DNA of 63,630 bases, filler included, from Octopus bimaculoides (Eukaryota): NCBI RefSeq assembly GCF_001194135.2. It is 5 parts of 3 records of this genome, joined end to end, with 100 filler letters (N's around TTAATTAATTAA, not from the genome) between each part and the next. Parts side by side here need not be neighbours in the genome. Positions count along the whole stretch, not along the records: positions 42,836 to 61,220 come from NC_068981.1; 4 more parts are not named here. One strand, given 5' to 3'. Below the pieces are notes generated by a model. It was not told the DNA's origin, did no database searches, and was given only the letters and a program-made list of their open reading frames with translations. The translations under genes were made by a program, and so were the position numbers. Within the stretch, counting starts at the first letter, position 1. Each line of letters opens with the position of its first letter. Positions 42,736 through 61,329 of the stretch are shown piece after piece.

Positions 42736-43393
42736 NNNNNNNNNNNNNNNNNNNNNNNNNNNNNNNNNNNNNNNNNNNNTTAATTAATTAANNNNNNNNN
42801 NNNNNNNNNNNNNNNNNNNNNNNNNNNNNNNNNNNTATATATATATATATATATATGTAATGTGAGATAATAGTTTCACTATGTACATATTATATAACAT
42901 AGTGTAACTATTAAAAGTGATACTATATCTCACATTACAATAGAGATGTTATTGTTTCACTTTTGACACATAATACTGAAACAGATTAAGAGATTACTCT
43001 CAGCTCGCATTTAGCAAGAATTTGAACATATTGGCCCATGACAGTCCATGGACCCTAAGTAGTGCATGTGTAAAATTTGAATGAAATCAGTTGGGTAGTT
43101 CTCGAGTTTTAGTGATGCACACACCCACATACAAACAGACAGACACACATTCTCAGTTTCATATATATATATAGATAATTGGCAGAGGTTACAGAATTAT
43201 TCAGGGGTCAAGAGCTATACATATTGGCACTTATTGGTAAGTGCCAAAGTATGAAATTCATGACCCTTCAGTCACTCTGTAGCTTGAATTTATATATATA
43301 TATATATATATGTCTGTGTGTGTGTGTGTGTATCATATACACACACACACATATACATACATAAATATACATATATATATATACACATGTATA

Positions 43394-43447
<54 letters not shown>

Positions 43448-44316
43448 TGTTGGCACTCCGTCGCTTACGACGTCGAGGGTTTCAGTTGATCCGGTCAACG
43501 GAACAGCCTGCTCGTGAAATTAACGTGCAAGTGGCTGAGCACTCCACAGACACGTCTACCCAAAACATAGTTCTCCGGGATATTCAGCATGACACAGTGT
43601 GACAAGGCTGGCCCTTTGAAATACGGGTACAACAGAAACAGGAAGTAAGAGTGAGAGAAAGTTGTGGTGAAAGAGTACAGNNNNNNNNNNNNNNNNNNNN
43701 NNNNNNNNNNNNNNNNNNNNNNNNNNNNNNNNNNNNNNNNNNNNNNNNNNNNNNNNNNNNNNNNNNNNNNNNNNNNNNNNNNNNNNNNNNNNNNNNNNNN
43801 NNNNNNNNNNNNNNNNNNNNNNNNNNNNNNNNNNNNNNNNNNNNNNNNNNNNNNNNNNNNNNNNNNNNNNNNNNNNNNNNNNNNNNNNNNNNNNNNNNNN
43901 NNNNNNNNNNNNNNNNNNNNNNNNNNNNNNNNNNNNNNNNNNNNNNNNNNNNNNNNNNNNNNNNNNNNNNNNNNNNNNNNNNNNNNNNNNNNNNNNNNNN
44001 NNNNNNNNNNNNNNNNNNNNNNNNNNNNNNNNNNNNNNNNNNNNNNNNNNNNNNNNNNNNNNNNNNNNNNNNNNNNNNNNNNNNNNNNNNNNNNNNNNNN
44101 NNNNNNNNNNNNNNNNNNNNNNNNNNNNNNNNNNNNNNNNNNNNNNNNNNNNNNNNNNNNNNNNNNNNNNNNNNNNNNNNNNNNNNNNNNNNNNNNNNNN
44201 NNNNNNNNNNNNNNNNNNNNNNNNNNNNNNNNNNNNNNNNNNNNNNNNNNNNNNNNNNNNNNNNNNNNNNNNNNNNNNNNNNNNNNNNNNNNNNNNNNNN
44301 NNNNNNNNNNNNNNNN

Positions 44317-44394
<78 letters not shown>

Positions 44395-44708
44395 CATATC
44401 ATTGAGACACAGTTGAATTAAGTGCTTAAGTTGAAGCATCAAGTCAGTCTGATATTATTGCACAGCTCAAAGTCAGGTGAATAAAATCTAAATAAGCAAC
44501 AGGATATCAAGAAGTGATGCAGTAGAACTGTTTCAAACAGCTCCATTTAATTGAACAACGCAATCATTACACCAAGTTAAATGCATTTTATTGTACCCGC
44601 AATCTGATATACTCGTATGTACAGAATATAGTAAATTTTTCAATCATAAAATTTATGCATAGGAAAACAATATCAGCGATGTATGTATGTATGTATGTAT
44701 GTATTATA

Positions 44709-45118
44709 TGAGGTGGCATTAAAAGGTTCCAGGGTTAATTATATTTAATAAAAAAATAACTTATCTAAGCTTTAGCATCATCTCCTTTGAAATAGTTGCC
44801 TTGCCCAGCATTCCTGCCACTTTTGGAATCTGACCTGGAAGTCGTTTTCCATAAGCAAGTTGAGGACTTTCTGAAATTTGCTTTGGACCTCAACAACAGT
44901 GTTAAAACAGCTACCTTTGAGCTGCATTTTCATCTTGGGGAAGAGATGGAGGTCACAGGCGCAGGAGTGGCTGTGTGGTAAGTAGCTTGCTTACCAACCA
45001 CATAGTTCCGGGTTCATTCCCACTGCGTGGCATCTTGGGCAAGTGTCTTCTACTATAGCCTCGGGCTGACCAAAGCCTTGTGAGTGGATTTGGTAGACAG
45101 AAACTGAAAGAAGCCCAT

Positions 45119-45155
<37 letters not shown>

Positions 45156-45880
45156 ATATGTTTGTGTGTCTGTGTTTGTCCCCCCCCCCATAACATTGCT
45201 TGACAACCGATTCTGGTGTGTTTAGGTCCCTATAACTTAGCAGTTCGGCAAAAGAGACCGATAGAATAAGTACTAGGCATCCAAAGAATAAGTCCTGGGG
45301 TCGATTTGCTCGACTAAAGGTGGTGCTCCAGCATGGCCGCGGTCAAATGACTGAAACAAGTAAAAGAGTAAAGAGTCCACAGGTGCTGAATCTGGTGGGT
45401 ACAGAAGTGATACCATGTTGTCTTTGGTGATAATCTCACAAGTAAGGAGAGCTTGGTGGCAGGGTGCATTGTTGTCATGAAGAATCCAATTCTTTGTGCT
45501 CCACAGATCTGGTTGCTTTTGCCAAATGTCCTCCCACAAACACTTCAAAACATCACAGTAGAACTCTGGATTGATGGTCTGGCCCTGGGGAATGAATTCT
45601 TGATGCACAATACCACATATCTGGGATTGATGCTTGTGACAGGTCTTCCAGATTGCTCATCATCTTCCAACGATGTTCTTCCACTTCTAAAGTGCCTGTG
45701 CCACTTGAAACATTGCACATGACTCATTGCCTTGTCACTATAAGCCTGTCGAAGCATGCTCAATGTCTCTGTAGCAGACGTCCAAAGTTTAATGCAAAAT
45801 TTCACGTTGGCTCTTTGTTCCTGTCCCTGACAAAATCACAGATTACAGCATACATGTGATCACAAAAACATAAATTTCAC
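44709..45880 (-). mobile_element. Internally deleted mariner interrupted by a SINE
   Basis: KFCIKL..ATETLSML..AY...KWHRHFRSGRTSLEDDEQSGRP; HQEFIPQGQTINPEFYCDVL; LHDNNAPCH. Right end approximate. Confidence 0.82.
44958..45376 (+). mobile_element. SINE family A inserted in a mariner
   Basis: Full-length match to 20076-20486. Confidence 0.9.
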
Positions 45881-46589
45881 AAGATTAGGAACGCTTAGCT
45901 GGAGAGAGATGCAGAGGACAAGCCTGTATGTAAGAACAACCACTCTTTTACTTAGCTCGGCGTACATATGTACGCAAGTAAGTGTGATTTCGTCATCATA
46001 AGGCGAGCATGAGTAATAACACATAGATACATATGTACATACATACATAGATGACGAACAAAAAATATTTCCAACTACATCAATATATGTCAACTGAGAG
46101 GAAGTATAACAAACATAAAATTGTTGTTGAGATGCTACTTCCTGTGAAGTAAGACGTCCAGATATCTGTGAAGCACTTAATATAGTGTGATACATACGAA
46201 GAATAAGACAGGAAATTCATGTATAGCAAATAATAATAATGTGAAGTGTGTACACACCTATTAATATAAACAATACTTGTCGATAGATGAGAAATATTCG
46301 GTCAATAAATGCTAAGATATAGTCTGGACAGTGTTCTTTAAGACAAAAACAAAACAAGACCACAAAAAGATAGCCATCCACCAAAGAATGAATTAATTAC
46401 AGTAAGTGTATGAGAATTATCTCTAGTTAATTTTGTCTTTCTTTCTTGTTTATATAAATGTTTTATACATACACACATACATATATGTATGTGTGTGTAT
46501 ATACGTATATATGTATGTGTATATATGTGTGTGTGTATATATGTATGTTTTTCGTTGTAAGGCTTTATTTTTTAGTTGATTTTCACCTA

Positions 46590-46651
46590 GCAAGACTTAT
46601 CATAGATGGCATAATAAGTCACACCCGGACAACGTCGGGTTATACTGCTAG
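46590..46651 (+). mobile_element. Helitron-like 3' terminus
   Basis: Hairpin acccggac-aac-gtcgggt (46623-46640) followed 7 nt later by CTAG|T. Confidence 0.5.
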
Positions 46652-46958
46652 TATATATATATATATATATATATATAGTTTTAGGGAAAAGAACCAAGGT
46701 TCATGAACTCATCGATGAAAATCTAAAGCTCAATGTAAAATTGTAAAGCTCAATTTAATTTTAATTTTTTATAAATTGATTTTAATTGAGTGTTTACCTG
46801 TAATTTTGGATTTTGTCCCTAATATTATTATATATATATAATATGGGTGTTTAGTTCACTGGTGATCTAAACAAATGGATTATCAGGGTTCTGGATATTT
46901 ATGCTGTGAAAATACTTTGCTGTAATACATACGGACTAACATCCATACCCTCTGAAAA

Positions 46959-47126
46959 ATGAACTGTGAACTTTATTTCCTTACTCTCTACTCTTCCATT
47001 TCATTGCTTATTATCTGCAAATTTTCCATGTCTAGATCTTTCATATGTTCTCTACTTGGCTCTGATGATGGAACACCCCATATTCAGGCATATTTGCCTA
47101 TCACTTGGGATATCTCAGAAACAGCT
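46959..47126 (+). CDS. Candidate first exon with signal-peptide-like N-terminus (MNCELYFLTLYSSISLLIICKFSMS...ISETA)
   Basis: ORF with a hydrophobic start. A possible donor ct|gtaaga at phase 0 is compatible with 47760-47820. The pyrimidine-rich start could instead be an intron acceptor tract. Confidence 0.25.
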
Positions 47127-47219
47127 GTAAGACCTCAACTAAGTTAAGAATAATAATGTATATGACTTGAGATGTTTGTTATGCCTTGGCATTTGTTGTC
47201 CTCTTTCACAAATATAAAT

Positions 47220-47273
<54 letters not shown>

Positions 47274-47759
47274 TCATCATATGTGTGTGTGTGTGTGTGT
47301 ACATAAAATTAATCCAAACAAGTGGAGGAAAAGGAGAAATGAAGTTGCAAAAGCACAGAGAATATATTAGAATTATTTCAAATTTCATTATACCTTAAAA
47401 TATAGGAATGCACTTGGCTGGTTTCACATGAGATTTTCAAAAGTGTATAGTGTATGGAGTTGTTTTGTAAATTATGTCTATTTTGATCATTATTATAAAA
47501 ATAGTTTGTTTTCAAAGTAGGAATCTGGCAATATATATAAAGAGCCTCTAAATGTATTAAATGTATACATACCATTAAAAGGCATGATGTTATGGAATTG
47601 TCTGAGATAAAATCTCTTCATTGACCTGTGTTAAAAACACAATGTATATCAGAGTGAGATAAATGTTGCTGCGGTGACTCGTGAGAATGACTTTCTTGAG
47701 ACTCGTCAATGGCAAGCATCTGTCACCTGTTTTAACAAAATTTGTACCTTGTTATATAG

Positions 47760-47820
47760 GAAACAGTGAATAAAATATTTACTAGCACTGCTGATGTTTG
47801 CCATGCTGTAGAAAAATTTG
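47760..47820 (+). CDS. Candidate upstream exon ETVNKIFTSTADVCHAVEKF(G/D)
   Basis: ttgtaccttgttatatag| acceptor and ttg|gtaaac donor. 61 nt, open only as phase 0 to phase 1. Link to the downstream gene is unproven. Confidence 0.3.
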
Positions 47821-47972
47821 GTAAACACAATGGAAACAGTATTAAATTAAAATAACCACCTGTGTATCATACTAAATGTATATGTACTGTTAGAAGGCAT
47901 AATACTGTGTCTGTTTCATATATTTAGCATTCTCACAAGCTACTACAGGATTGTTATTTCATCTCCCTCTGA

Positions 47973-48073
<101 letters not shown>

Positions 48074-48177
48074 TTATATATAGAGGGTGATAAATTGAAT
48101 ATTAATTCAATTGAAAACCAAGTGGCCTAGCATATAAAAAATCTGAAAATTCAGAAAAATTGTATTACGTGTGTATA

Positions 48178-48485
48178 AGAAGGGATGACCACTAAGTGGA
48201 CATCCTATATGCTAGAAAGAGGTCATCAATGACCCAACCACAAAGAAAAATAGTGTTCTCCAGAAAAAATTTTCGCAAAACACCAGAGCATAGCGAGCAA
48301 GACAAAATGAGAAATATACAGAATAAAAGAATTCTTTTATTCTGTGTATTTCTCATTTTGTCTTGCCCGCTATACTCTGATGTTTTGCGAAATTTTTTTC
48401 TGGAGAACATTATTTTTCTTTGTGGTAGGGTCGTTGATCACCTCTTTCTAGCATATAGGATGTCCACTTAGTGGTCATCCCTTCT
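48178..48485. mobile_element. Spacerless 308-bp palindrome, MITE-like, TA flanks
   Basis: 154-bp arms centred on GAATTC (48329-48334); I count 9 mismatches. Confidence 0.85.
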
Positions 48486-48956
48486 TACACACACACACAC
48501 ATATATATTGTTTTCAAATGCAGTACATCAATAAGAGATGTCTCAGATGAATATTCTTCCTAGCTTCTTTGAATGATTATTAATGATCGTAATGCTCTCT
48601 CACTGTCACAGCTGGATTCCTTGTGTTGTCTCTAGTATTTCATTATTGAATTCAAGTTCATCAGGCAAATTGAATTTACCATGTTTAAATTTTTTAAACC
48701 TTTTTTTGTTATTTCTTACATATATACATACATGCATTGTCATCATTGTTTAATGCCCATGTTTTATGCTGGCATGGGTTGGAAAGTTAGACAGGATGTG
48801 ATTGGCTCAAGGACTGCATCACATATGTGTCTACTTGGGGGCATAAGGATGGCCTCTTAACTCATATTTATTGTAATTATTCATTAATGCTTTGTCTGTT
48901 AATTTGCAGAGATTACAAACCATCAATAGAAAAAGAAAGAAAATTTGTATTAAATA

Positions 48957-49038
48957 ATGAACTTCCAAACAACACCAGATCATGAAAGAACTTATTCAAC
49001 AGATGCAAGCCAATCACATATGCTACATTTCCATGCAA
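48957..49038 (+). CDS. Probable upstream coding segment MNFQTTPDHERTYSTDASQSHMLHFHA (exon starts ~48910)
   Basis: Acceptor tttgtctgttaatttgcag| at 48909 and donor caa|gtaagt at 49039. The phase-1 end matches the TM exon. The ATG has A at -3 and an in-frame upstream stop. Confidence 0.5.
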
Positions 49039-49263
49039 GTAAGTTCTTAATTATTTTAATCGATTTCATATATTAGTGTATGTCATCCAGGAGTGTTACC
49101 ATACTTGCCACGCTTGACACAGTGGGTTTGTAAGCCTTTTAGAGGGCTTTTTCTTCATGCAGGAATATGTTGGGGCTTGTTCTTTACTGTTGATACTCGC
49201 ATGACACATGGACACACACACACATGAAAATAAATAAGTAAAAAAAGTTGAAAGGTTAAAAAA

Positions 49264-49636
49264 TAGGGGTGGCTGTGTGGTAAGTAGCTTGCTTACCAAC
49301 CACATGATTCCGGGTTCAGTCCCACTGCGTGGCATCTTGGGCAAGTGTCTTCAACTATAGCCTCGGGCGGACCAAAGCCTTGTGAGTGGATTTGGTAGAC
49401 GGAAACTGAAAGAAGCCCGTCGTATATATGTATATATATGTGTTTGTGTTTGTCCCCCTAGCATTGCTTGACAACCGATGCTGGTGTGTTTATGTCCCCG
49501 TCACTTAGCGGTTCGGCAAAAGAGACCGATAGAATAAGTACTAGGCTTACAAAGAATAAGTCCTGGGATCGATTTGCTCGACTAAAGGCGGTGCTCCAGC
49601 ATGGCCGCAGTCAAATGACTGAAACAAGTAAGAGAG
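49264..49636 (+). mobile_element. SINE family A
   Basis: Full-length match to other copies. Confidence 0.9.
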
Positions 49637-49956
49637 TATACATGCTCACAGTCCCTCCTCCAGCACCACCACTTTTGGATGGCCACTGACTTTCCTCTGC
49701 TCTTTTTAATGGGTTTCGTTTTCTGTCCTGCAGGGTGTCTAATAACCACCCTCCTCACTCAGCTTATTTGGTGGGGTTACCAGTTTAGTCACCAATGACC
49801 CAACCAAGACGAAAGACAATATGACAAGATGATCTCAGCTGCTACCTGGGCCTGCATGATCGTGACTGGTCAGAAATAGGCAGTAGTGGAAGGAATCCAG
49901 GGAGGGATTCGTCTTTTAAGAGTAACGAAGCCCAGGTTGAGGTTTAACGTAATGGT

Positions 49957-50164
49957 TCTTTTACTCTTTTACTTGTTTCAGTCATTTGACTGTGGCCATG
50001 CTAGAGCACCGCCTTTAGTCAAGCAAATCAACTCCAGGACTTATTCTTTGTAAGCCTAGTACTTATTTTATCGGTCTCTTTTGCCGAACTGCTAAGTCAC
50101 GAGGACGTAAACACACCACCATCGGTTGTCAAGCGATGTTGGGGGGACAAACACAGGCACACAA

Positions 50165-50225
<61 letters not shown>

Positions 50226-50392
50226 CGATGGGCTTCTTTCAGTTTCCATCTGCCAAATCCACTCACAAGGCTTTGGCTGGCCCGAGGCTATAGTAGAAGA
50301 CACTTGCCCAAGGTACCACGCAATGGGACTGAACCCGGAATCATGTAGTTGGTAAGCAAGCTACTTACCACACAGCCACTCCTACACCTATG
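49957..50392 (-). mobile_element. SINE family A
   Basis: Reverse complement of the family consensus. Confidence 0.9.
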
Positions 50393-51253
50393 GAAATTTC
50401 TGTAGAAAAACAACTAGTAGGGACCTATGAATCAGTCTTTCCTACAATAACCTGGATACAAAATATCTGTTGCATGACATTGTATAAAACTGTCAAAACC
50501 AAGTGATTCCAAACGATTCTCTTTGTTAATGGCCATCTACCATCTTTTGTCAAATATCAGCTTACCAATTATAAATGGAAGGAAGACTGATACTCCCAGA
50601 TTGTTCATGAGACTGTTTTAGTCTGTTAGGGAATCTGTAGGGAGAGCTTGAATGCACAGATGCTACACTCCAATCTCTCCTTGAGGAAATTACTATGTGG
50701 AAATCTTCCATCATCATTCATCATTGTTTAACGTTCCTTTTTTCACCCTAGCATGGGTTGGACGGTTTAACTGGAATTGATAAGCCGGAGAACTACACTA
50801 AACTTCAATGTCTGCTTTGGCAATAGTTTCTACAGCTGAATGCCCTTCATAAATACTCTACAGAGTATACTAGATGCCTTTTTTGTGGCACTGTCACTTG
50901 TGAGGTCACCAAATACTCACAAGACATGATGCCTAGACTGAGTGAAGGATAGTATTGAAGGGGGTGAGAGTATGATAAAGAGACAGGAACATGTGTTTTG
51001 TTAAAGAGAACATATGGCTTCTCCAGTTTGGATCGGGACATAGCCTCAAAGTATAAGATTAATATGTCTACTTATCCATGCTTACATGGGTTGGAGAAAG
51101 TTTGAGGCAGATTTTCTACAGATGTTCTTCTTGTCACCAACCCTCGACCATTTTTCCATTTTTATGGAATATATTAGAAATGAATGACACTGTTTGTAAG
51201 ACAGTAACACATATTTACAACTGTCATGGCAAGAACACACACACACACACATA

Positions 51254-51454
51254 CTCTTTTACTTGTTTCAGTCATTTGACTGTGGCCATGCTGGAGCACC
51301 GCCTTTAGTCGAGCAAATCGACCCCGGGACTTATTCCTTGTAAGCCTAGTACTTATTCTATCGGTCTCTTTTGCCGAACCGCTAAGTGACGGGGACATAA
51401 ACACATCAGCATCGTTTGTCAAGCAATGCTAGGGGGACAAACACAGACACACAA

Positions 51455-51485
<31 letters not shown>

Positions 51486-51590
51486 CATATATACGACGGG
51501 CTTCTTTCAGTTTCCGTCTACCAAGTCCACTCACAAGGCTTTGGTCCGCCCGAGGCTATAGTAGAAGACATTTGCCCAAGATGCCACGCA
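51254..51590 (-). mobile_element. SINE family A (5' end degenerate)
   Basis: Reverse-complement match. Confidence 0.85.
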
Positions 51591-52535
51591 AAGCTTCTTT
51601 CACCAAATTCACTCACAAGACTCAAGGTTATAGAAGCCCAAGGTACCACACGGAAGGACTGAACCTGAAACTGTGTGGTCAGAAAAAGCATAATGTAGCA
51701 AACTGGTAGAAACGTTAGCACGCCGGGTGAAATGCTTAGCGGTATTTCGTCTGCGGCTACGTTCTGAGTTCAAATTCCGTTGAGGTCGACTTTGACTTTC
51801 ATCCTTTCAGGGTCGATTAAATAAGTACCAGTTACGCACTGGGCTCGACATAATCCGTTTGTCTGCCCTTGTTTGTCCTCTCTGTGTGTAGCACCTTGTG
51901 GGCAGTAAAGAAATAAGAAAAGCAATAATGTGTGTGTGTGAGAGAGAGTTATTGCAAAAACTATACACACATTGGCGCAGGCGTGGCTGTGTGGTAAGAC
52001 GTTTGCCTCCCACTCACATGGTTCCAGTGAGTGGATTTGGTAGACGGAAACTGAAACAAGCCCGTCGTATATGTGTGTGTGTGTCTTTGTAGTCTCTCCA
52101 CCATCGCTTGACAACTAATGTTGGTGTGTTTACGTCCCTGTAACTTAGCAGTTCGGCAAAAGATCCCAGTAGAATAAGTACTACACTTACAAAGAATTAG
52201 TCCTGGGGTCGATTTCTTCGACTAAAGCCCTTTAAGGTGGTGTTCCAGCATGACGTATTTGTGTAGCCAACCTTGTTTATCAATATCAAGTTTAAGTAAA
52301 GGGAAATAACTCCTTCTGAATCCGAATTATTTCCCTTTTTTCGTCGTCCCACCTGTCGTGTACTCTTTCACTTTAGCCATAATGACTAGCTATTTCCACC
52401 TTCTTATGCACGGATGTATATATATATATATTAAGCTAATAATAAGGATTATTATTTTTTTTTTTTTTCTTTCCAAATAAGCACATGCAATATATATTTG
52501 TTCTTCACTCATTTATTACTCTTCTTATTCTAACT

Positions 52536-52861
52536 CAGGCCTGGCCAACTCGAATTACATTGCAGGCCACTTTAATGACAGAAAGTGCTGAGGGCCGCTT
52601 GTATACTGACAGAATTGAAAGCATTTTGCTTTCTCATGCTGTTATTACAATAACGAATGAATGATCGTTGATTCAACATGAAATATCGTTGCAAAAACAG
52701 TAGAATCTTTGTGTTTTACTTTGCATAACGAGCTTTAATTTTTGATAAAATTTTTTAAATGTTTGTTTGAAGAAATCCATTTCAAGAAAGTATCAAACTG
52801 GCCGCAAGATAAAAGTCTGCGGGTCACATGCGGCCCATGGGTCTCAGGTTGGCCAGCACTG
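52536..52861. mobile_element. hAT-like non-autonomous element
   Basis: TIRs caggcctggccaac / gttggccagcactg and subterminal tgcggccc; no intact TSD. Confidence 0.5.
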
Positions 52862-53479
52862 TAAAACACATGTCCATTGTCTGGAAATCTTTCGTCACAC
52901 ATCTGTGACCTCTTCAGTGACACTTTTCGTCTTTGTGTGTGCTCTTGCTCCACTTATTTCATTCTGCTCTTCTATGATGCGTATCCTTATGTGAGTATGC
53001 GTTTACATCCGTGTATGTGTGTGAGTATGACCTTCGCTCAACCCCATCCTCTTCGCCTGTTGTTGCAGCTGATTTCCTAGGATCCAAAACTTTGGTATAG
53101 TTTCTGTATCTCTGTGTTCACCTACGATGCTGCCATTGTGGTAATTGTTGTTATTGTTGCCACCGTTGTCACCGCTGCTACTGCTGTCATTGTTAGTACT
53201 GTTGCAGCTGTCTGTGAAGTTACTGTGTGTGTGTGTGTATATATGAGTTCGCTTCTTATGTTGTTCGTATCCATGCCCTTTATATAGATTTATTCATTTA
53301 TTTATCATTTTTCATCTACTTCTATTTCTTATATGTATCACAGGTATGTGCATATATGTCTACTGTGTGTGTATTACCTTGTTTGTATCTATGTTTTATT
53401 TATATTATTATTTATTCCTTATCTCTTCTCCTCTCATCTGTCTTTAGTCATGTGGTGTGGTGGTTACTGTTCCATTCGG

Positions 53480-53900
53480 GTTTTCTATTGAGGCTCAGCC
53501 TGTCTACTGCTATGTGTGTAGCCTCTGTGATCTGTTTAAGTGTCATGTCAGTTCTATGTGTCGATAATACTTTAACCTCTATGCTATTAACCAAGCCTCC
53601 AAGTTCTGCTTGAGTATGTTAGTAGAGCACTGATGAGCCTTTCCCTTCTTTGAGCTCTCACCAGTGTTCACCTATACACTCCCCTATGCTGCATGCAGTC
53701 TCTCCAATGTAAGTAGTTGTCATGTTTCTGCACAGTTCCTCAGTACATCATCAGCTATACACTATGTTCTTAACCTTACAGTTAATCCGTAGGTTCATCC
53801 TACATACAACACAATTGTTCTCCATAGATGGGAACTTATCAAAGGGATAGGTTCTACAGATCAAGGATGTTATAGGGGCATCAGGCCTTTCTGCTACTTT
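53480..53900 (-). mobile_element. Penelope-like element GIY-YIG endonuclease relic
   Basis: NNCVVCRMNLRINCKVKNIVYS**C..LC...TTTYIGETACSIGECIGEHW, which matches CxxC..NVVY..C..C..YIGET.R...R..EH. Confidence 0.78.
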
Positions 53901-53954
53901 AATCCATAGAGTAGCTTTACTTAAATGTTATTCTAAAAAGGTAAAAAAAATGAC

Positions 53955-54352
53955 CAGGAGTGGCTGTGTGGTAAGTAGCTTGCTTACCAACCACATGGTT
54001 CTGGGTTCAGTCCCACTGCGTGGCATCTTGGGCAAGTGTCTTCTACTATAGCCTCGGGCCGACCAAAACCTTGTGAGTGGATTTGGTAGACGGAAACTGA
54101 AAGAAGCCCGTCGTATGTATGTATACATATATTTGTGTGTTTGTGTGTCTGTGTCTGTCCCCCCAACATCGCTTGACAACCGATGCAGGTGTTTTTACGT
54201 CCCCGCAACTTAGCAGTTCGGCAAAAGAGACCGATAGAATAAGTACTAGGCTTGCAAAGAATAAGTCCTAGGGTCGATTTTCTCGACTAAAGGCGGTGCT
54301 CCAGCATGGCCGCAGTCAAATGACTGAAACAAGTAAAAGAGTGAAAGAGAGA
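53955..54352 (+). mobile_element. SINE family A
   Basis: Full-length match. Further partial or degenerate copies lie at ~4975, 16841, 18005, 20855, 40670, 51975, 56035, 58477, 59200, 60240 and 60700. Confidence 0.9.
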
Positions 54353-54475
54353 GTATCCTGAAATACAATATCTATTTCAAGACATGATTTCACATCAGGA
54401 GCTTCTGACAAAAAAAAGTTCCTACTTATGTCTTTTCATGTTTATATTTTCATCCTTTTCCTAATTTTCTTTTAG

Positions 54476-54560
54476 GATTAATTACTTATATTGGCGCTAC
54501 TATATCTGTTGGATTATGCATCATCACTCTTTGTGTCTTGATTTGGTACATCAGGAAACA
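54476..54560 (+). CDS. Internal coding exon encoding a transmembrane helix: (x)LITYIGATISVGLCIITLCVLIWYIRK(Q)
   Basis: Long pyrimidine tract ending ttttag| and a perfect donor |gtgagt. The 85-nt exon (phase 1 to phase 2) is open in this frame only from the acceptor. It gives ~22 hydrophobic residues followed by WY-RK stop-transfer residues. Confidence 0.78.
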
Positions 54561-54710
54561 GTGAGTATCCATTTTTCATTCTTTATTAGGAAGTTACTCC
54601 TCAGAGAATAAAGAACTTGATAAACCCAGCATTCCAATCAGACCAAATTCCCAGATAAATTCTACAGAATGTTTGCATTGTTTTCATCATCATCACCATC
54701 ATTATTGTCA

Positions 54711-55055
54711 GCATGTAAAAAGCACCATCCAAACATGATAGATGCCAGTGTCCCCCGACTGGCTCCCATGCTGGTGGCACATAAGCACCATCCGAACATG
54801 GTCGATGCCAGTGCCCTCTGACTGGTGGCATGTAAAAAGCACCATCCAAACATGGTCAATGCCAGTGCCCACTGACTGGCTCCTGTACCAGTGGCATGTA
54901 AAATGCATCCACTATACTGAGAGGTTGGCATTAGAAAGGGCATCCATGCCAGGTCAGACTGGACTTGGTGCAGCCTGCTGGCTTGCCAGTCCTCAGTCAA
55001 ACCGTCCAACCCATACCAGCAAGGAAAACGGACGTTGAAACGATGATGATGATGA
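54711..55055 (+). mobile_element. Older RTE-related 3'UTR with internal ~60-70 bp tandem units
   Basis: Three related units (gcatgtaaaaagcaccatccaaacat..gatgccagtgccc..gactgg), then the RTE-type tail ggacgttgaaac(gat)n. Confidence 0.65.
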
Positions 55056-56204
55056 TCATAATCATCATCATATTTTCTCTATATCTAGTTATGGTATTTA
55101 TCACCGCAGTTACAGAGATGCAATAAGATTGTCTTCCACTGCACACAGAGCTAAACAGTTTAATTTGCCTCCTAAAACAATAAACATTGAGCAGGAAATA
55201 TTTTAGTAAAACAAAGCTATAACAGTAAAGTTTATTTTTAAACTGGTATTCTGTCAGTTATGATGATGACTTGCAGTTGATCCGGGCAACGGAATAACCT
55301 GTTTGTGGAAGTAATGAAGTGGCTGAGCACTCCGCAGACACCCCATCCTCTTAACATAGTTGTCGGGGAGATTGTGTAGCACAGTGTGACAAGGCTGGCC
55401 CTTTGAATTATGGGTATGGCTCCTTTTTGCCAGCCAAGTGGACAGGTGCAACACGAGATGAAGGGTTTTCCTCAAGGGTACATTTCACTGCCAGGAATTG
55501 AACTTACAACTGTGAGCCAGACACTATAACCAATAAGCCACGCACCTTCACAATAACACTAGTTTATTATAGTGTTAATATAACACTGTGAGCTGGCAGA
55601 AACGTTAGCATGCCAGGCGAAATGCTTAGCAGTATTTCATCTGTTTTTACATTCTGAGTTCAAATTCTGCCGAGGTCAACTTTGCCTTTCATTCTTTTGG
55701 CGGGGTTGAGAAATTAAGTACCAGTTGTGTACTGAGGTCAATCTAATTGACTGCCCCATCCCCCCCAAAATTTCAGGCCTCGTGCCTAGAGTAGAAAAAG
55801 ATATAAATAAATAAAAGGACCACTACCAATTTTGTGGAAACCTCCTTTGACAAAAACTGACTTTCCTCTTCAACAGCTTAAACTGTTGACATGGACAATT
55901 TCAATCTTACTTGGGTGGCCTGTGAAGAAGCCCTTAGCATAGCCCCTTCCTCCCAAAATCCCCTTTGATATCGCATAAAAGCATACAAGACAATTTCATG
56001 AGTTGAGGTCATCTGGATTGTGCATGGGATTATAGGTGCAGGCATGGCTGTGTGGTAAGAAGTTTGCTACCCAACCACAGTTTTGAGTTCATTCCCATTG
56101 CATGGCATTTTGGACAAGTCTCTTCTCCTATAAACCTGGTCCAACTAAAGCCTTGTAAATGGAGAGAATCTAAAAGAACCTTATCATAGCTATATATAGT
56201 GTAA

Positions 56205-56855
56205 GTATCTTGAGAGAAAAGCTGAACATTAGAAGCATCAGTTGTGGCGTGCAAGAGAGACGATTGCGCTGGTATGGACATGTGGTGAGAATGGAGGAGG
56301 ATAGCTGCGTGAAAAAGTGCCACACCCTAACAGTTGAGGGAACCCGTGGAAGAGGTAGGCCCAGGAAGACCTGGGCTGAGGTGGTGAAGCAAGACCTTCG
56401 TACATTGGGCCTCACCGAGGCGATGACTACGGACCGAGACCTTTGGAAATGGGCTGTGCGTGAGAAGACCCGGCNNNNNNNNNNNNNNNNNNNNNNNNNN
56501 NNNNNNNNNNNNNNNNNNNNNNNNNNNNNNNNNNNNNNNNNNNNNNNNNNNNNNNNNNNNNNNNNNNNNNNNNNNNNNNNNNNNNNNNNNNNNNNNNNNN
56601 NNNNNNNNNNNNNNNNNNNNNNNNNNNNNTGGCACATAAAAGACACCATTTCGAGCGTGGCCGTTTTCGTGCGGGTGACACGTAAAAGCACCCACTACAC
56701 TCTCTGAGTGGTTGGCGTTAGGAAGGGCATCCAGCTGTAGAAACTCTGCCAAATCAGACTGGAGCCTGGTGTTGCCATCCGGTTTCACCAGTCCTCAGTG
56801 AAATCGTCCAACCCATGCTAGCATGGAAAGCGGACGTTAAACGATGATGATGATG
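56205..56855 (+). mobile_element. 5'-truncated RTE-clade LINE (ORF C-terminus plus 3'UTR, (ATG)n tail)
   Basis: RRLRWYGHVVRM..RGRGRPRKTW..DL..DRDLWK; gap 56475-56629. Confidence 0.9.
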
Positions 56856-57195
56856 GTGTGTGTGTGTGTGTGACTGTCTCCTTGTTTTGACTTTGTGTGA
56901 TAGTTGCAAATGAGTGTCACTATCCTGCAAGCATTGTCCTCCGTTTCCAACCTTCTGTGGAAACATGTCTGGTTATGGGGAAATATTACCTTGCTTGGAA
57001 ACGGGTGAGAGTTGGCAACAAATCTCATCCAGCTCATACAAACATGGATGTTAAGTGAAGACAATAATGATAATTATTCAGAGTAGCAATCAATTATCAC
57101 ATATATCCTTTTCTTCTCTAAATTTTGGTGCTTATCTCTCGCTTTCTAGATTGTATTGACTCTTTTGTTACTCTTTCTCTTCCTTCCTGAACAAA

Positions 57196-58470
57196 CATCA
57201 TCATCATCATCATCATCATCGTTTAACGTCCGCTTTCCATGCTAGCATGGGTTGGACGATTTGACTGAGGACTGGTGAAACCGGATGGCAACACCAGGCT
57301 CCAGTCTGATTTGGCAGAGTTTCTACAGCTGGATGCCCTTCCTAACGCCAACCACTCAGAGAGTGTAGTGGGTGCTTTTACGTGTCACCCGCACGAAAAC
57401 GGCCACGCTCGAAATGGTGTCTTTTATGTGCCNNNNNNNNNNNNNNNNNNNNNNNNNNNNNNNNNNNNNNNNNNNNNNNNNNNNNNNNNNNNNNNNNNNN
57501 NNNNNNNNNNNNNNNNNNNNNNNNNNNNNNNNNNNNNNNNNNNNNNNNNNNNNNNNNNNNNNNNNNNNNNNNNNNNNNNNNNNNNNNNNNNNNNNNNNNN
57601 NNNNNNNNNNNNNNNNNNNNNNNNNNNNNNNNNNNNNNNNNNNNNNNNNNNNNNNNNNNNNNNNNNNNNNNNNNNNNNNNNNNNNNNNNNNNNNNNNNNN
57701 NNNNNNNNNNNNNNNNNNNNNNNNNNNNNNNNNNNNNNNNNNNNNNNNNNNNNNNNNNNNNNNNNNNNNNNNNNNNNNNNNNNNNNNNNNNNNNNNNNNN
57801 NNNNNNNNNNNNNNNNNNNNNNNNNNNNNNNNNNNNNNNNNNNNNNNNNNNNNNNNNNNNNNNNNNNNNNNNNNNNNNNNNNNNNNNNNNNNNNNNNNNN
57901 NNNNNNNNNNNNNNNNNNNNNNNNNNNNNNNNNNNNNNNNNNNNNNNNNNNNNNNNNNNNNNNNNNNNNNNNNNNNNNNNNNNNNNNNNNNNNNNNNNNN
58001 NNNNNNNNNNNNNNNNNNNNNNNNNNNNNNNNNNNNNNNNNNNNNNNNNNNNNNNNNNNNNNNNNNNNNNNNNNNNNNNNNNNNNNNNNNNNNNNNNNNN
58101 NNNNNNNNNNACGCATGCGTCATACAGTCTGCCTTTTACTCTGAGTGAGAGTCCCTTTGTCGCCAGCAGGGGTAAGAGCTCTCTAAACTTTGCCCAGGCT
58201 ATTCTTATTCTAGCAGCTACACTTTCAGCGCACCCACCCCCACTACTAACTTGGTCGCCCAGATAGCGGAAGCTATCGACTACCTCTAGTTTTTCACCCT
58301 GGAATGAGATAGAAGTTGTTTCCTGTTTGTTTGCAGTCTTTATTGCACCTGAACATCTGCCACAAACAAAAACTAACTTGCTAGTTAACCTGCCTTTGAT
58401 GTTGCTGCACCTCTTATGTGTCCATAGCTTGCACCGGGTATAGCTTAGTTCGCATGAAACATTGTCTGAT
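57196..58470 (-). mobile_element. RTE-clade LINE copy with PHD-like insert and late RT motifs
   Basis: CKLWTHKRCS..FVCGRC; LEVVDSFRYLGD..IRIAWAKFRELLPLL..KGRLYDAC. 3'UTR nearly identical to 56630-56855. Confidence 0.9.
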
Positions 58471-59663
58471 ATATTCTTTTCTTTTACTTGTTTCAGTCGT
58501 TTGACTGTGGTCATGCTGGAGCACCGCCTTTAGTCGAACAAAGCGACTCCAGGACTTTGTAAGCCTAGTACTTATTCTATTGGTGTCTTTTGCTGAACTG
58601 CTAAGTTACAGGGATTTAAACACACCAACATTGGCTGTCAATCGATGATGAGGGTACAAACACACATGCATATATATATATATATAAGGTTGAGGAGGGT
58701 ATTGGATTTAACTAAACCCAAAAAGATACAGGTAATACCAAGTAAGTGCTGAGCTTCTTTCCCTTTCCATCTACCAAATCCACTCACAAGGCTATAGTAG
58801 AACCCAAGGTACCAGGCAGTGGGACTGAACCTGGAACTATGTGGTTGGGAAGCAAGCTTCTTACCCACAAAGCCATCCCTTCACCCATGTTTAATTTTTT
58901 TTTTATAAATCCTAAACAATGCAAGTTATAAGAATTAATACAGCTCAATGGTTTATACTTTTAACTTGTATTTCAATATTAGGATCCCTTCTTCAGAAAA
59001 TCTTCTGAGAAATGGTCTTGTAAAAAACATACAAACAATCAATCTGTATTATTTCCACACACACNNNNNNNNNNNNNNNNNNNNNNNNNNNNNNNNNNNN
59101 NNNNNNNNNNNNNNNNNNNNNNNNNNNNNNNNNNNNNNNNNNNNNNNNCACACACACACACACACACACACACGGTTTTTTAAAAAAAACAGATCTGACT
59201 GTGTGATAAGAAGATAACTTCCTAATCACATGGTTCTGGGTTCAGTCCTACTGTGTTGCACCTTGGGCAAATGTCGTCTACAAAAAGCCTCAGCTTCACT
59301 AAAACCTTATGAATGGATTTGGTAGATGGAAACTGAAAGAAGCCTGTCGTATATATATATATATATGTGTGGGTGTGTCTCTGTGTTTGCCCCCCACCAT
59401 CACTTCACAACTGGTGTTGGTGTTTAAAAGACCATAACTTAGCAGTTCAGTAGAAGGGAACAATAAAATAAGTGCCAGGTTTTATACAAAAGATAAATAC
59501 TAGAGTTGATTTGTTGGACTGGAAAAAAGAAATTCAAGGTGGTGCCGTAGTATGGCCAGAGTCTAATGACTGAAACGAGTAAAAGATAGAAAACATGCAT
59601 CTCCATTTGTCTGTCCATCCAATTTCCTACATTATGAAATAATTATTTTCTTTTCTCTCACAG

Positions 59664-59976
59664 AAAAAGCGTAACTTTTGAGCAAGTTCCGGTAGAAGAT
59701 GGCAATACAAATGAAGGTAAAAGTAATACGAAAAACGTATATGATGACTTCCAATATCTCAGATGTAAAAACAACGAAAACACGCAACATAATGACAACA
59801 GAATGCAGCAGACCAGTGTTGTTTATGAAACACCAACAATAGAAAAAGAACATGTCACACTCAGAGGAAACACTACAGATGAAGATGCAAATATTTATGG
59901 CAATACTCTGCAACACCAGAGGCTTGAAAGGCAACCCAAGAGCGAAATATATATGAACATGGATACCAATAGGTAG
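59664..59976 (+). CDS. Terminal coding exon: tyrosine-motif cytoplasmic tail (KSVTFEQVPVEDGNTNEGKSNTKNVYDDFQYLRCKNNENTQHNDNRMQQTSVVYETPTIEKEHVTLRGNTTDEDANIYGNTLQHQRLERQPKSEIYMNMDTNR*)
   Basis: Strong acceptor ttttcttttctctcacag|. The first base completes codon CA|A from the TM exon, so the phase matches. There are 103 open codons to TAG (59974-59976) with hydrophilic composition and recurrent V/I-Y motifs. Confidence 0.78.
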
Positions 59977-60197
59977 AAGAGGCTAGAGTAACTAGAAGAG
60001 GACTTGTACATATCTTAATCAAAAATGTCTACTGAATTTTCCCCTTGTCTGTATTCCATTTGTTTTAGCCATTACAGCTAAGGCCCATGTCAGGTCAGGC
60101 CAGAGCAGCAATCTTATATATATATATATATATTTATTCAAACTGAGATTTTAGCCTACATTTCAGTAATGGCCTAAAATATCAGTTTAAATATATG

Positions 60198-60668
60198 CAG
60201 GATGGGCCAAAAGTCACGCACCGAAACATTTGACATTTTATTCTTTTATTTGTTTGTCATTTTGACTGCAGCCATGCTGGAGCACCACTTTTAGTCCACC
60301 AAATCGCCCCCAGGACTTATTCTTTGTAAGCCTAGTACTTATTCTATCGGTCTCTTTTGCTGAACCGTTAAGTTACGGGGACGTAAACACACCAGCATCG
60401 GTTGTCAAGCGATGGTGGGAGGGGGGACAAACACACATATATACACATGATGGGCTTCTTTCAGTTTCCATCCACCAAATCCACTCACAAGGCTTTGGTC
60501 GGCCTGAGGCTATAGTAAACACTTGTGCAGTAGGACTGAACCTGGAACCATGTAGTTGGTAAGCAAACTACTTATCTCACAGCCACTCCTGTTCATTATT
60601 TTAGAAAAATTGAAGCTAGCCCTTAACAGTAAGTTTTAATCTTGGTGCCTGAATTTTGGTCCACCCTG
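60198..60668. mobile_element. Tc1/mariner-type MITE interrupted by a SINE
   Basis: caggatgggccaaaagtcacgcacc vs the reverse complement of ggtgcctgaattttggtccaccctg|ta. Confidence 0.6.
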
Positions 60669-61329
60669 TATATTTACAATATTTATAAACTGTTATGTGT
60701 GTTTACATGCATGGTTAAGTTCATTTTGCAACCATTTGGTTTTGAGTTCAGTCCCACTGCATGGCAGCTTAACCAAGTGTCTTTTACTTACAACCCTGGG
60801 CTGACCAATGCTTTGTTAATGAATTTAGTAAATGGAAACTGTGTGGTAGCCTGATATTATGTGTGTGAATGCATGTACATGTTTATCTTATTACTTGACA
60901 GTGTTGGTTTGTTTATGTCCCTGTAACTTGGCAATTTGGTAAAAAAAAAAAAAAATGAAAAAAACAAACAAAAATGTTGGGGCCGCTTTGATAGACTGAA
61001 ATCTGAGACAATGCTCCAGCATGGCCACAATCCAATGACTAAAAAAAAAAAAAATATATACACACAGACTCATTTATGTAGCACACTGTTGAATCATTAA
61101 GTCTTTTTTTTTTTTACATACTTTATGGTAAACAACATTGAATTTTCAACTGTTATTGAAGAAATCATTTTCAAAAATATTTTATTCAGTAAAAGATATT
61201 ATGGACTTGGCAGGTCAATTNNNNNNNNNNNNNNNNNNNNNNNNNNNNNNNNNNNNNNNNNNNNTTAATTAATTAANNNNNNNNNNNNNNNNNNNNNNNN
61301 NNNNNNNNNNNNNNNNNNNNTGTATAATT

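What the first reader, a model, noticed from the sequence alone, without database searches (positions are those of the whole stretch)
48957..59976. Hidden spliced gene for a small transmembrane-adaptor-like protein with a CD28-type YMNM motif
Seen: three exons with canonical splice sites and matching phases (1, then 2) join into a 159-aa ORF that is absent from the ORF track. It has ~30 N-terminal residues, one TM helix with two Cys (GLCIITLCVLIWYIRK) and a 106-aa hydrophilic tail with no catalytic domain and five Tyr: NVYDDF, QYLR, VVYETP, NIYGNT, EIYMNM. All exons lie between the joins at 42791 and 61265. Established: YMNM is the CD28 motif that binds PI3K p85 and Grb2, YxN binds Grb2, YxxP binds Crk/Abl/Nck-type SH2 domains, and acidic-I-Y is a Src-family substrate context. 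Vertebrate TRAPs (LAT, NTAL, PAG, SIT, TRIM) have this short-ectodomain, multi-Tyr design. Inference: this may be a mollusc SH2-scaffolding adaptor or immune co-receptor, most likely convergent. Caveat: IYxN tails are common in invertebrate receptors, so it could be the end of a longer receptor.
Basis: partly seen in the sequence, partly recalled or inferred. Interest (0 to 1): 0.8.

Follow-up and report, generated by a model that had tools for sequence, protein, structure and literature searches.

The report
Octopus small tyrosine-rich membrane adaptor gene
The three exons form a real octopus gene, already in the public annotation as "uncharacterized", for a 159-residue single-pass membrane protein whose floppy tail keeps five tyrosine docking-type motifs across octopods, so it looks like a signalling adaptor, though no experiment or expression data support that yet.

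Summary
Exons 48957-49038, 54476-54560 and 59664-59976 have GT-AG borders and phases 1 and 2, and join into the 159-aa ORF as described. All three assembly gaps lie inside intron 2 and touch no exon.

The gene is not new. It is 100% identical to RefSeq XP_014775714.1/XP_014775715.1 (LOC106873026, Octopus bimaculoides, "uncharacterized protein").

Orthologs with the same three-exon structure exist in O. vulgaris/O. sinensis (86% identity) and in Argonauta hians (40%). Nothing else matched among 1.84 billion representative proteins, and no Pfam family matched.

Coding is supported by frame-preserving indels, dN/dS of 0.26 (0.15 in the tail) and a reading frame that is open in all four genomes. 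A stop codon two codons before the ATG argues against this being the end of a larger receptor.

All five tail tyrosines are conserved in Argonauta together with their key flanking residues: YDDF, YL, YExP, IYxN and a YxN at the EIYMNM position (YANT there). Argonauta also has an extra C-terminal EIYYNM.

The adaptor reading (LAX- or DAP10-like, convergent) is therefore plausible but rests on motifs alone. There is no juxtamembrane CxxC, no charged transmembrane residue, no expression data and no biochemistry. Interest is moderate.

The parts
48957..49038 (+). Coding exon 1 (82 nt): start ATG to intron phase 1. Encodes the poorly conserved N-terminal 27 residues. An in-frame TAA lies at 48951-48953.
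   Evidence: The ATG, the upstream stop and the gtaagt donor are identical in O. vulgaris/sinensis. Exon lengths of 82, 85 and 79 nt in the three lineages all give phase 1.
49039..54475 (+). Intron 1 (5437 nt), full of SINE-like and other repeats.
54476..54560 (+). Coding exon 2 (85 nt in all four genomes), the transmembrane exon.
   Evidence: About 97-98% identical between O. bimaculoides and O. vulgaris/sinensis over a 196-nt stretch that covers the exon and its flanks.
54478..54552 (+). Codons 29-53, the single TM helix LITYIGATISVGLCIITLCVLIWYI, followed by RKQK.
   Evidence: Hydropathy. The AlphaFold2 model has a helix at 16-60, with mean pLDDT per 10-residue block peaking at 79 (residues 31-40) and 91 (41-50). 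Conserved face G34xxxS38-C42-T45-L49-Y52, helical moment P=0.03.
54561..59663 (+). Intron 2 (5103 nt). Holds all three assembly gaps (56475-56629, 57433-58110, 59065-59148) and a lineage-specific repeat block.
59664..59976 (+). Coding exon 3 (313 nt including the TAG stop): the cytoplasmic-type disordered tail.
   Evidence: tail dN/dS 0.15; pLDDT<50; only this frame is open in all four genomes.
59740..59763 (+). Y82-DDF-Q-Y87-LR. Both Tyr, DDF and L are invariant in Argonauta.
59818..59835 (+). VVY110ETP, a YExP motif (Argonauta: TVYEIP). This is a Crk/Abl/Nck-type SH2 ligand context.
   Evidence: The motif meaning comes from established SH2 specificity data.
59893..59904 (+). IY134GN, a YxN motif (Argonauta: IYCN). 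This is a Grb2-type SH2 ligand context with Ile at -1.
   Evidence: YxN as the Grb2 motif: PMC3342071.
59944..59961 (+). EIY152MNM, a YxNM motif. Argonauta has EVYANT at the aligned position plus an extra C-terminal EIYYNM.
   Evidence: YINM/YMNM binding of PI3K p85 and Grb2: PMC5852076.

Best explanation
This is a genuine, stand-alone, three-exon gene restricted to octopods as far as these searches reach: Octopus bimaculoides LOC106873026. It encodes a 159-aa single-pass membrane protein.

The most likely working model is a phosphotyrosine scaffold of the transmembrane-adaptor type, in these steps:
1. With no signal peptide, the hydrophobic segment at 29-53 inserts as a signal anchor. The short N-terminus (28 aa) faces outside and the RKQK-led 106-aa disordered tail faces the cytosol (inferred).
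2. Non-receptor tyrosine kinases of the Src/Abl type phosphorylate the conserved [I/V]-Y sites (inferred).
3. The phosphorylated motifs recruit SH2 proteins: Grb2/Drk at YxN (Y134, Y152), PI3K p85 at the C-terminal YxNM, and Crk/Abl/Nck-type domains at YExP (Y110) (inferred).
4. The conserved polar/small face of the TM helix (GxxxS...C...T) suggests it pairs with itself or with a ligand-binding partner, because the ectodomain is too short and too variable to be a receptor (inferred).

Shown here: the gene structure, the coding constraint, the architecture and the motif conservation.
Inferred only: topology, phosphorylation, binding partners and cell type.
For: Gene reality:
- 100% match to a RefSeq/UniProt model.
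- Identical splice sites and phases in O. vulgaris, O. sinensis and Argonauta hians.
- Both coding indels are 3 nt.
- Nei-Gojobori dN/dS is 0.26 overall and 0.15 in the tail.
- There are 23 amino-acid differences against 32.2 +/- 2.8 expected from the same 46 substitutions placed at random (P about 0.001).
- Only the proposed frame of exon 3 is open in all four genomes.

Stand-alone status:
- In-frame stops lie just upstream of the ATG.
- No other gene is called within 10 kb in the Octopus loci.

Architecture:
- One strong hydrophobic segment.
- The AlphaFold2 model shows a helix at 16-60 and a tail with pLDDT<50.
- No Pfam domain.

Motifs:
- All five tail Tyr are invariant at 40% overall identity, together with D83 D84 F85, L88, E111, P113, I133, N136, E150 and N154.
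- Identity is 55% within -2..+3 of the Tyr against 34% elsewhere in the tail.
- Argonauta carries a third YxN and a terminal YYNM.
- I/V at -1 is conserved at Y110, Y134 and Y152.
- The motif meanings come from the literature.
Against: - No paper mentions the locus.
- Within one sequence the motif counts are close to chance, because the tail is 14% Asn.
- The enrichment of conservation around the Tyr is only marginal (Fisher P=0.07). Other non-Tyr stretches (TLTFEQ, NRM, QHQ, PTI) are equally conserved.
- Only three lineages are available and two are nearly identical, so 'conserved' rests essentially on one distant comparison.
- Topology is ambiguous in Argonauta: flank charges are similar on both sides, and N-glycosylation sequons occur in both the N-terminus and the tail.
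- There is no juxtamembrane CxxC, no PxxP, no ITAM/ITIM and no TM charge.
Confidence: 0.45

Rival explanations
1. The gene and protein are real, but the conserved Tyr-containing stretches are not SH2 docking sites. The protein would be a small accessory or trafficking membrane protein. YDDF and YMNM would act as YxxPhi sorting signals, or the tail would bind partners without phosphorylation. Its role would come from the TM helix pairing with a channel, transporter or receptor.
For: YDDF and Y[MY]NM also fit the YxxPhi endocytic pattern in all three proteins. The TM helix is the best conserved part and has a conserved GxxxS face. Several conserved tail stretches contain no Tyr. Motif counts are near chance in an Asn-rich tail.
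Against: Five of five Tyr are conserved. The Asn at +2 is kept at both YxN sites, Pro at +3 of YExP is kept, and I/V at -1 is kept. Together these fit kinase/SH2 logic better than sorting signals, which do not need Asn or Pro. Argonauta has added a further YxN/YxNM copy.
Confidence: 0.3
2. The orientation is reversed (type II): the short N-terminus is cytosolic and the Asn/Thr/Gln-rich tail is extracellular and glycosylated. The Tyr motifs would then have nothing to do with SH2 signalling.
For: In Argonauta the basic residues are balanced on both sides of the TM segment, and the tail carries three N-x-S/T sequons. O. bimaculoides has its only sequon in the tail (N125).
Against: RKQK/SRKK directly follows the TM segment in all species. 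The N-terminus carries sequons in O. vulgaris (NNS/NST) and Argonauta (three). The tail has no conserved Cys and none of its sequons is conserved in position. A short N-terminus of under 30 residues is readily translocated (established knowledge).
Confidence: 0.1
3. The three exons are the last exons of a larger receptor gene whose upstream exons lie outside the piece.
For: An acceptor-like ttgcag|AG at 48908 upstream of the ATG shows that exon 1 probably continues from a 5' exon.
Against: An in-frame TAA sits two codons before the ATG in the Octopus species, and TAA/TAG/TGA lie within 60 nt in Argonauta. Any upstream exon would therefore be 5' UTR. The gene models deposited for all four genomes (O. 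bimaculoides, O. sinensis, O. vulgaris, Argonauta hians) begin at this Met. No other gene is called within 10 kb upstream. No receptor tail in 1.84 billion representatives resembles it.
Confidence: 0.03
4. It is a chance ORF or a mis-predicted model, meaning non-coding sequence.
For: The N-terminal 28 residues show no constraint (9 nonsynonymous against 1 synonymous change). No transcript-derived copy was found in the protein collection. Overall nucleotide divergence of the CDS (9.6%) is about the same as that of the introns.
Against: An ortholog at 40% identity in Argonauta has identical intron positions and phases. There is an excess of synonymous change (P=7e-5 overall, 2e-6 in the tail). 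Indels preserve the frame. The frame is open in four genomes while the other five frames are not.
Confidence: 0.02

Closest known systems
LAX (LAX1) and the other vertebrate transmembrane adaptor proteins (LAT, NTAL/LAT2, PAG, LIME, SIT, TRIM)
   Same: Short N-terminal ectodomain without a ligand-binding domain, one TM helix, and a catalytically inert disordered tail with several Tyr motifs including repeated YxN. Like LAX, it has a YxxM site and no juxtamembrane CxxC (features per PMC3342071; sequence features).
   Different: No sequence similarity to any TRAP Pfam family. The tail is much shorter (106 aa against 200-400). There are 2-3 YxN sites rather than 5. It was found only in octopods. 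The TRAPs are a functional class rather than a homologous family, so any likeness is convergent. Phosphorylation and immune-cell expression are untested.
DAP10 (HCST), the YINM signalling subunit of NKG2D
   Same: A very small single-pass protein whose tail has a YxNM motif, which in DAP10 binds both PI3K p85 and Grb2 (PMC5852076). The ectodomain is too small to bind ligand, which implies signalling on behalf of a partner.
   Different: DAP10 has a cleaved signal peptide, ectodomain cysteines for disulfide dimerisation and an Asp in the TM helix for receptor pairing (my knowledge). Here there is no N-terminal signal sequence, no ectodomain Cys and no charged TM residue. The octopus tail has four further conserved Tyr.
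CD28 cytoplasmic tail (YMNM)
   Same: The literal YMNM tetrapeptide in the Octopus species. This motif couples CD28 to PI3K.
   Different: There is no Ig ectodomain and no PYAP/PxxP motif. The exact YMNM is not conserved: YANT/YYNM in Argonauta. There is no homology.

Membership tests
Transmembrane adaptor proteins (TRAP class: LAT, NTAL, PAG, LIME, LAX, SIT, TRIM) | Short extracellular segment of a few to about 20 residues without a ligand-binding domain | tested here: inconclusive
   There are 28 residues before the TM segment, poorly conserved and without a domain. That this end is extracellular is only inferred from RKQK after the TM segment and from N-terminal sequons in two of three lineages.
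Transmembrane adaptor proteins (TRAP class) | Single transmembrane helix | tested here: met
   One hydrophobic segment at 29-53 (mean KD 2.38; next best -0.43). The AlphaFold2 model has a helix at 16-60, with block-mean pLDDT peaking at 79-91 over residues 31-50.
Transmembrane adaptor proteins (TRAP class) | Cytoplasmic tail without enzymatic activity that carries multiple tyrosine-based SH2-binding motifs | tested here: met
   No Pfam domain. The tail is disordered. Five conserved Tyr, including 2-3 YxN, one YxNM and one YExP. This is a sequence pattern only.
Transmembrane adaptor proteins (raft-associated subgroup LAT/NTAL/PAG/LIME) | Juxtamembrane CxxC palmitoylation motif | tested here: not met
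   No CxxC. C42 and C47 lie inside the helix with CxxxxC spacing, and C47 is Ala in Argonauta. LAX also lacks the motif, so the wider class is not excluded.
Transmembrane adaptor proteins (TRAP class) | Inducible tyrosine phosphorylation by Src/Syk-family kinases and recruitment of SH2 proteins | not testable with these tools
   Needs biochemistry.
Any named TRAP, DAP10 or LST1-type Pfam family | Significant sequence match to the family profile | tested here: not met
   hmmscan against Pfam-A at E<=10 (P0001, P0002) and E<=1 (P0003) returned only DUF6821, Col_cuticle_N and PFF1_TM, all far below cut-off and all on the TM segment. The PDB profile search found nothing meaningful.
DAP10/DAP12/FcR-gamma-type signalling subunits | Acidic residue in the TM helix for pairing with a basic residue of the receptor; ectodomain Cys for disulfide dimerisation; cleaved signal peptide | tested here: not met
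   The TM sequence LITYIGATISVGLCIITLCVLIWYI has no charged residue. There is no Cys in residues 1-28 and no N-terminal hydrophobic signal.
DAP10/DAP12/FcR-gamma-type signalling subunits | YxNM (DAP10) or ITAM (DAP12, FcR-gamma, CD3-zeta) in the tail | tested here: met
   YxNM is present at the C-terminus in all three proteins (YMNM, YMNM, YYNM). No ITAM, ITIM or ITSM was found.
CD28/CTLA-4/ICOS co-receptor family | Ig-V ectodomain with a stalk Cys; tail with YxxM and proline motifs | tested here: not met
   There is no ectodomain beyond 28 residues, no Ig domain and no PxxP. Only the YMNM tetrapeptide is shared.

The most novel reading that the evidence does not exclude
Octopods evolved their own transmembrane phosphotyrosine scaffold. 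It would be either a lineage-restricted gene or one diverged beyond recognition, unrelated by descent to vertebrate LAT/LAX/DAP10. It would couple a still unknown receptor to Grb2/Drk-Ras and PI3K through conserved YxN/YxNM/YExP sites. That would be convergent invention of the TRAP design in a lophotrochozoan, possibly in hemocytes or neurons.
Probability: 0.35. Interest if true: 0.6.

Novelty: new member of a known kind. Interest (0 to 1): 0.35.

Why it matters
Transmembrane adaptor proteins are described almost only from jawed-vertebrate leukocytes, and how invertebrate immune and neural receptors assemble signalosomes at the membrane is poorly known. A small octopod-restricted protein with conserved Grb2-, PI3K- and Crk/Abl-type docking motifs would be a tractable example of convergent evolution of this design, and a handle for finding the receptor it serves. 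It also shows how short-linear-motif proteins can arise or diverge quickly in a lineage. As it stands it is an annotated but uncharacterised gene with a reasonable, untested functional hypothesis.

Tried and rejected
- Pfam scans of all three orthologs gave only sub-threshold hits on the TM segment.
- A profile search against PDB sequences found nothing meaningful.
- An exhaustive HMMER search of 1.84 billion representatives and a word-seeded profile search of 5.8 billion proteins with the three-sequence alignment found only the three octopod proteins. No decapodiform, other molluscan or vertebrate relative and no paralog turned up.
- tblastn of the Octopus and Argonauta proteins against +/-10 kb of all four loci found no tandem paralog.
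- A literature search for the locus and accession identifiers gave zero papers.
- Exact-sequence look-up for transcript-derived contigs returned only the genome assemblies, so there is no expression evidence.
- ITAM, ITIM, ITSM, NPxY, di-leucine, CxxC and PxxP scans were all negative.
- The antisense 100-aa ORF over exon 3 (59632-59934) was rejected as chance. It is interrupted in the other three genomes.
- A Foldseek search was not run, because the model is low-confidence outside the TM helix and would give meaningless matches.
- The high conservation of exon 2 plus its 3' intron flank in Octopus was examined. The flank is not conserved in Argonauta, so this was not pursued.

Full report
**1. 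What the sequence shows**

The piece 42836-61220 is base-for-base identical to Octopus bimaculoides assembly GCA_001194135.2, chromosome CM046601.1 (locus L001).

Joining 48957-49038, 54476-54560 and 59664-59976 gives 480 nt.
- Donors are CAA|gtaagt and ACA|gtgagt.
- Acceptors follow long pyrimidine tracts (ttttcttttag|G, ctctcacag|A).
- Exon lengths of 82 and 85 nt give intron phases 1 and 2.
- A TAA lies two codons upstream of the ATG.
- The bacterial-style ORF list contains only the last 57 codons of exon 3. That is why the gene looked hidden.

**2. The assembly gaps**

All three N runs (56475-56629, 57433-58110, 59065-59148) lie inside intron 2 (54561-59663). No exon or splice site abuts a gap.

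The gap-free loci of O. sinensis (L002) and O. vulgaris (L003) have a shorter intron 2. They lack a counterpart for about 55.05-59.17 kb of the window, which is the block that holds the gaps. That block contains LINE/RT-like ORF pieces and a 99% inverted duplication directly flanking two gaps.

The proteins of all species are collinear. Nothing coding is therefore missing in the gaps.

**3. It is an annotated gene**

The joined protein is 100% identical over its full length to XP_014775714.1/XP_014775715.1. This is 'uncharacterized protein LOC106873026', UniProt A0A0L8H3M9.

Relatives found:
- O. vulgaris/O. sinensis LOC115214262: 161 aa, 86% identity in the alignment (85% by BLASTP).
- Argonauta hians GAB1597841.1: 175 aa, 40% identity.

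Nothing else was found, whether by an exhaustive HMMER scan of 1.84 billion representative proteins or by a profile search of 5.8 billion. There is no tandem paralog within +/-10 kb of any of the four loci. No paper mentions the identifiers.

**4. Is it really coding?**

- In L002 and L003 the ATG, the upstream TAA and all four splice sites are the same, and the two coding indels are each 3 nt.
- In Argonauta the gene again has three coding exons of 79, 85 and 364 nt, giving the same phases 1 and 2, with intron positions that match in the alignment.
- Nei-Gojobori dN/dS between O. bimaculoides and O. vulgaris is 0.26 overall, 0.15 in the tail and 0.29 in the TM part. It is above 1 in the N-terminal 28 residues, but on few sites.
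- Placing the same 46 substitutions at random with the observed transition/transversion ratio gives 32.2 +/- 2.8 amino-acid changes. The observed number is 23 (P about 0.001). Only 18% of such simulations stay stop-free.
- The binomial excess of synonymous change has P=7e-5 overall and 2e-6 in the tail.
- Of the six frames of exon 3, only the proposed one is open in all four genomes. The antisense ORF seen in O. bimaculoides is broken elsewhere.

A caveat applies. Total nucleotide divergence of the CDS (9.6%) is similar to that of the introns (6-11% mismatches), so the constraint is moderate rather than strong. The N-terminal 28 residues appear unconstrained. I put the probability that this is a real stand-alone protein-coding gene at about 0.95.

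**5. Not the tail of a larger receptor**

- In-frame stops lie immediately upstream of the ATG in Octopus (TAA at -2 codons).
- In Argonauta, TGA lies at -4 codons, with TAG and TAA further up.
- The gene models of all four genomes start at the same Met.
- No other gene is called within 10 kb upstream.

The acceptor-like ttgcag|AG at 48908 suggests only a 5' UTR exon upstream. That would fit the two RefSeq transcript variants that encode one protein. This last point is inference.

**6. Architecture**

- One hydrophobic segment at residues 29-53 (mean KD 2.38; next best window -0.43).
- AlphaFold2 with the three-sequence alignment gives a single long helix at 16-60. Block-mean pLDDT peaks at 79 and 91 over residues 31-50, and nearly all of the rest is below 50.
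- No Pfam family matched and no PDB relative was found.
- RKQK (Argonauta SRKK) follows the helix. The N-terminus carries N-x-S/T sequons in O. vulgaris and Argonauta, though not in O. bimaculoides.

I infer an N-out/C-in signal-anchor topology. In Argonauta the flank charges are balanced, and sequons also occur in the Asn-rich tail, so topology is not settled.

Thirteen of 25 TM residues are identical between Octopus and Argonauta. They lean to one helical face (G34xxxS38, L41, C42, T45, L49, Y52; moment 0.36, P=0.03), which hints at a helix-helix interface. C47 is Ala in Argonauta. The two cysteines are intramembrane with CxxxxC spacing, so they are not the juxtamembrane CxxC of raft-associated adaptors.

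**7. The tyrosine motifs**

All five tail Tyr are invariant across the three proteins. Their informative neighbours are too:

| Tyr | Octopus | Argonauta |
|---|---|---|
| Y82 | YDDF | YDDF |
| Y87 | YL | YL |
| Y110 | VYETPTI | VYEIPTI |
| Y134 | IYGN | IYCN |
| Y152 | EIYMN | EVYAN |

Argonauta adds a further C-terminal EIYYNM. The conserved features are therefore two to three YxN sites, a C-terminal YxNM and one YExP, not the literal CD28 string YMNM.

- Identity is 55% within -2..+3 of the Tyr against 34% in the rest of the tail (Fisher P=0.07).
- In the single sequence the counts are not beyond chance. Two or more YxN occur in 13% of shuffles and YxNM in 1.9%, the latter a post hoc test.
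- No ITAM, ITIM, ITSM, NPxY, PxxP or di-leucine motif is present.

Motif meanings rest on the literature:
- YxN is the Grb2 SH2 motif used to discover NTAL, and YxxM binds p85 in LAX (PMC3342071).
- DAP10 YINM binds p85 and Grb2, and CD28 YMNM is the PI3K site (PMC5852076).
- Two points rest on my own knowledge of peptide-library studies (Songyang and colleagues) and were not checked here. One is that YxxP/YExP suits Crk/Abl/Nck SH2 domains. The other is that I/V at -1 marks non-receptor tyrosine-kinase substrates.

**8. Mechanism proposed**

Confidence is 0.45. The steps are:
1. Signal-anchor insertion, with the tail in the cytosol.
2. Phosphorylation of [I/V]-Y sites by Src/Abl-type kinases.
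3. Recruitment of Grb2/Drk, p85 and Crk/Nck-type adaptors.
4. Input from a partner receptor through the TM helix face, since the ectodomain is short and unconstrained.

Everything after the architecture is inference.

Main rival (0.3): a small accessory or trafficking protein in which YDDF/YxNM act as YxxPhi signals, or in which the tail binds partners without phosphorylation.

Lesser rivals:
- Inverted topology with an extracellular tail (0.1).
- Terminal exons of a larger receptor (0.03).
- Chance ORF (0.02).

**9. Comparison with known systems**

By the definition in PMC3342071, transmembrane adaptor proteins are a design class without mutual sequence homology. The design is a short ectodomain, one TM helix, and a non-enzymatic Tyr-motif tail, with or without CxxC.

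The octopus protein fits the design and is closest to LAX (no CxxC; YxN plus YxxM). In size and in its YxNM motif it is closest to DAP10. It fails DAP10's defining TM acidic residue, ectodomain Cys and signal peptide. It fails CD28's Ig domain and proline motif. It matches no family profile.

It can be said to look like a TRAP. It cannot be filed as a member of any named family.

**10. Verdict**

- The gene model is already public but uncharacterised.
- The functional idea is reasonable and is now backed by cross-octopod motif conservation, but it is untested.
- Novelty: a new (convergent) member of a known kind, if the function holds.
- Interest: 0.35.

Noticed in passing
window 56475-58514 (inside intron 2): A near-perfect inverted duplication directly abuts two assembly gaps. 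The readable arms are 56630-56858 and 57205-57432, 99% complementary. Outward of them lie LINE/reverse-transcriptase-like ORF pieces on opposite strands (56210-56474 on +, 58111-58514 on -). The whole 55.05-59.17 kb block is absent from intron 2 of O. vulgaris/sinensis. It is either a palindromic TE insertion or a scaffolding artefact.
   Followed up: partly
window 45273-45805, minus strand: A relic of a mariner/Mos1-type transposase. The HTH_48 domain scores E=7e-8 and there is a weak partial DDE match. It is broken into short ORFs.
   Followed up: partly
window 44957-45370, 49265-49638, 53955-54342, 59166-59551 and others: Many copies of a SINE-like repeat of about 350-400 nt lie in the flanks and both introns, plus numerous (TA)n/(CA)n microsatellites. 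The same repeat family is scattered through the O. vulgaris/sinensis loci.
   Followed up: no
window 54466-54700: Exon 2 together with about 140 nt of the downstream intron is 97-98% identical between O. bimaculoides and O. vulgaris/sinensis, while neighbouring intron sequence is 85-92%. Exon 2 has only one synonymous and one nonsynonymous change. The intron flank is not conserved in Argonauta. The cause is unknown; possibilities include a splicing enhancer, an RNA structure or chance.
   Followed up: partly
window 59632-59934, minus strand: A 100-aa antisense ORF overlaps exon 3. It is open only in O. bimaculoides (1 stop in O. vulgaris/sinensis, 4 in Argonauta), so it is a by-product of the AT-rich sense codons.
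   Followed up: yes
window 59977-61220: No AATAAA or ATTAAA occurs in the 1.24 kb between the stop codon and the end of the piece. The 3' UTR end is therefore not identifiable here and may lie beyond the piece.
   Followed up: no
L004 20627-23758 (Argonauta hians): The nearest called neighbour of the Argonauta ortholog is a DUF2046 (PF09755) gene on the opposite strand, about 7 kb downstream. It could serve as a synteny anchor for finding orthologs in other cephalopods.
   Followed up: no
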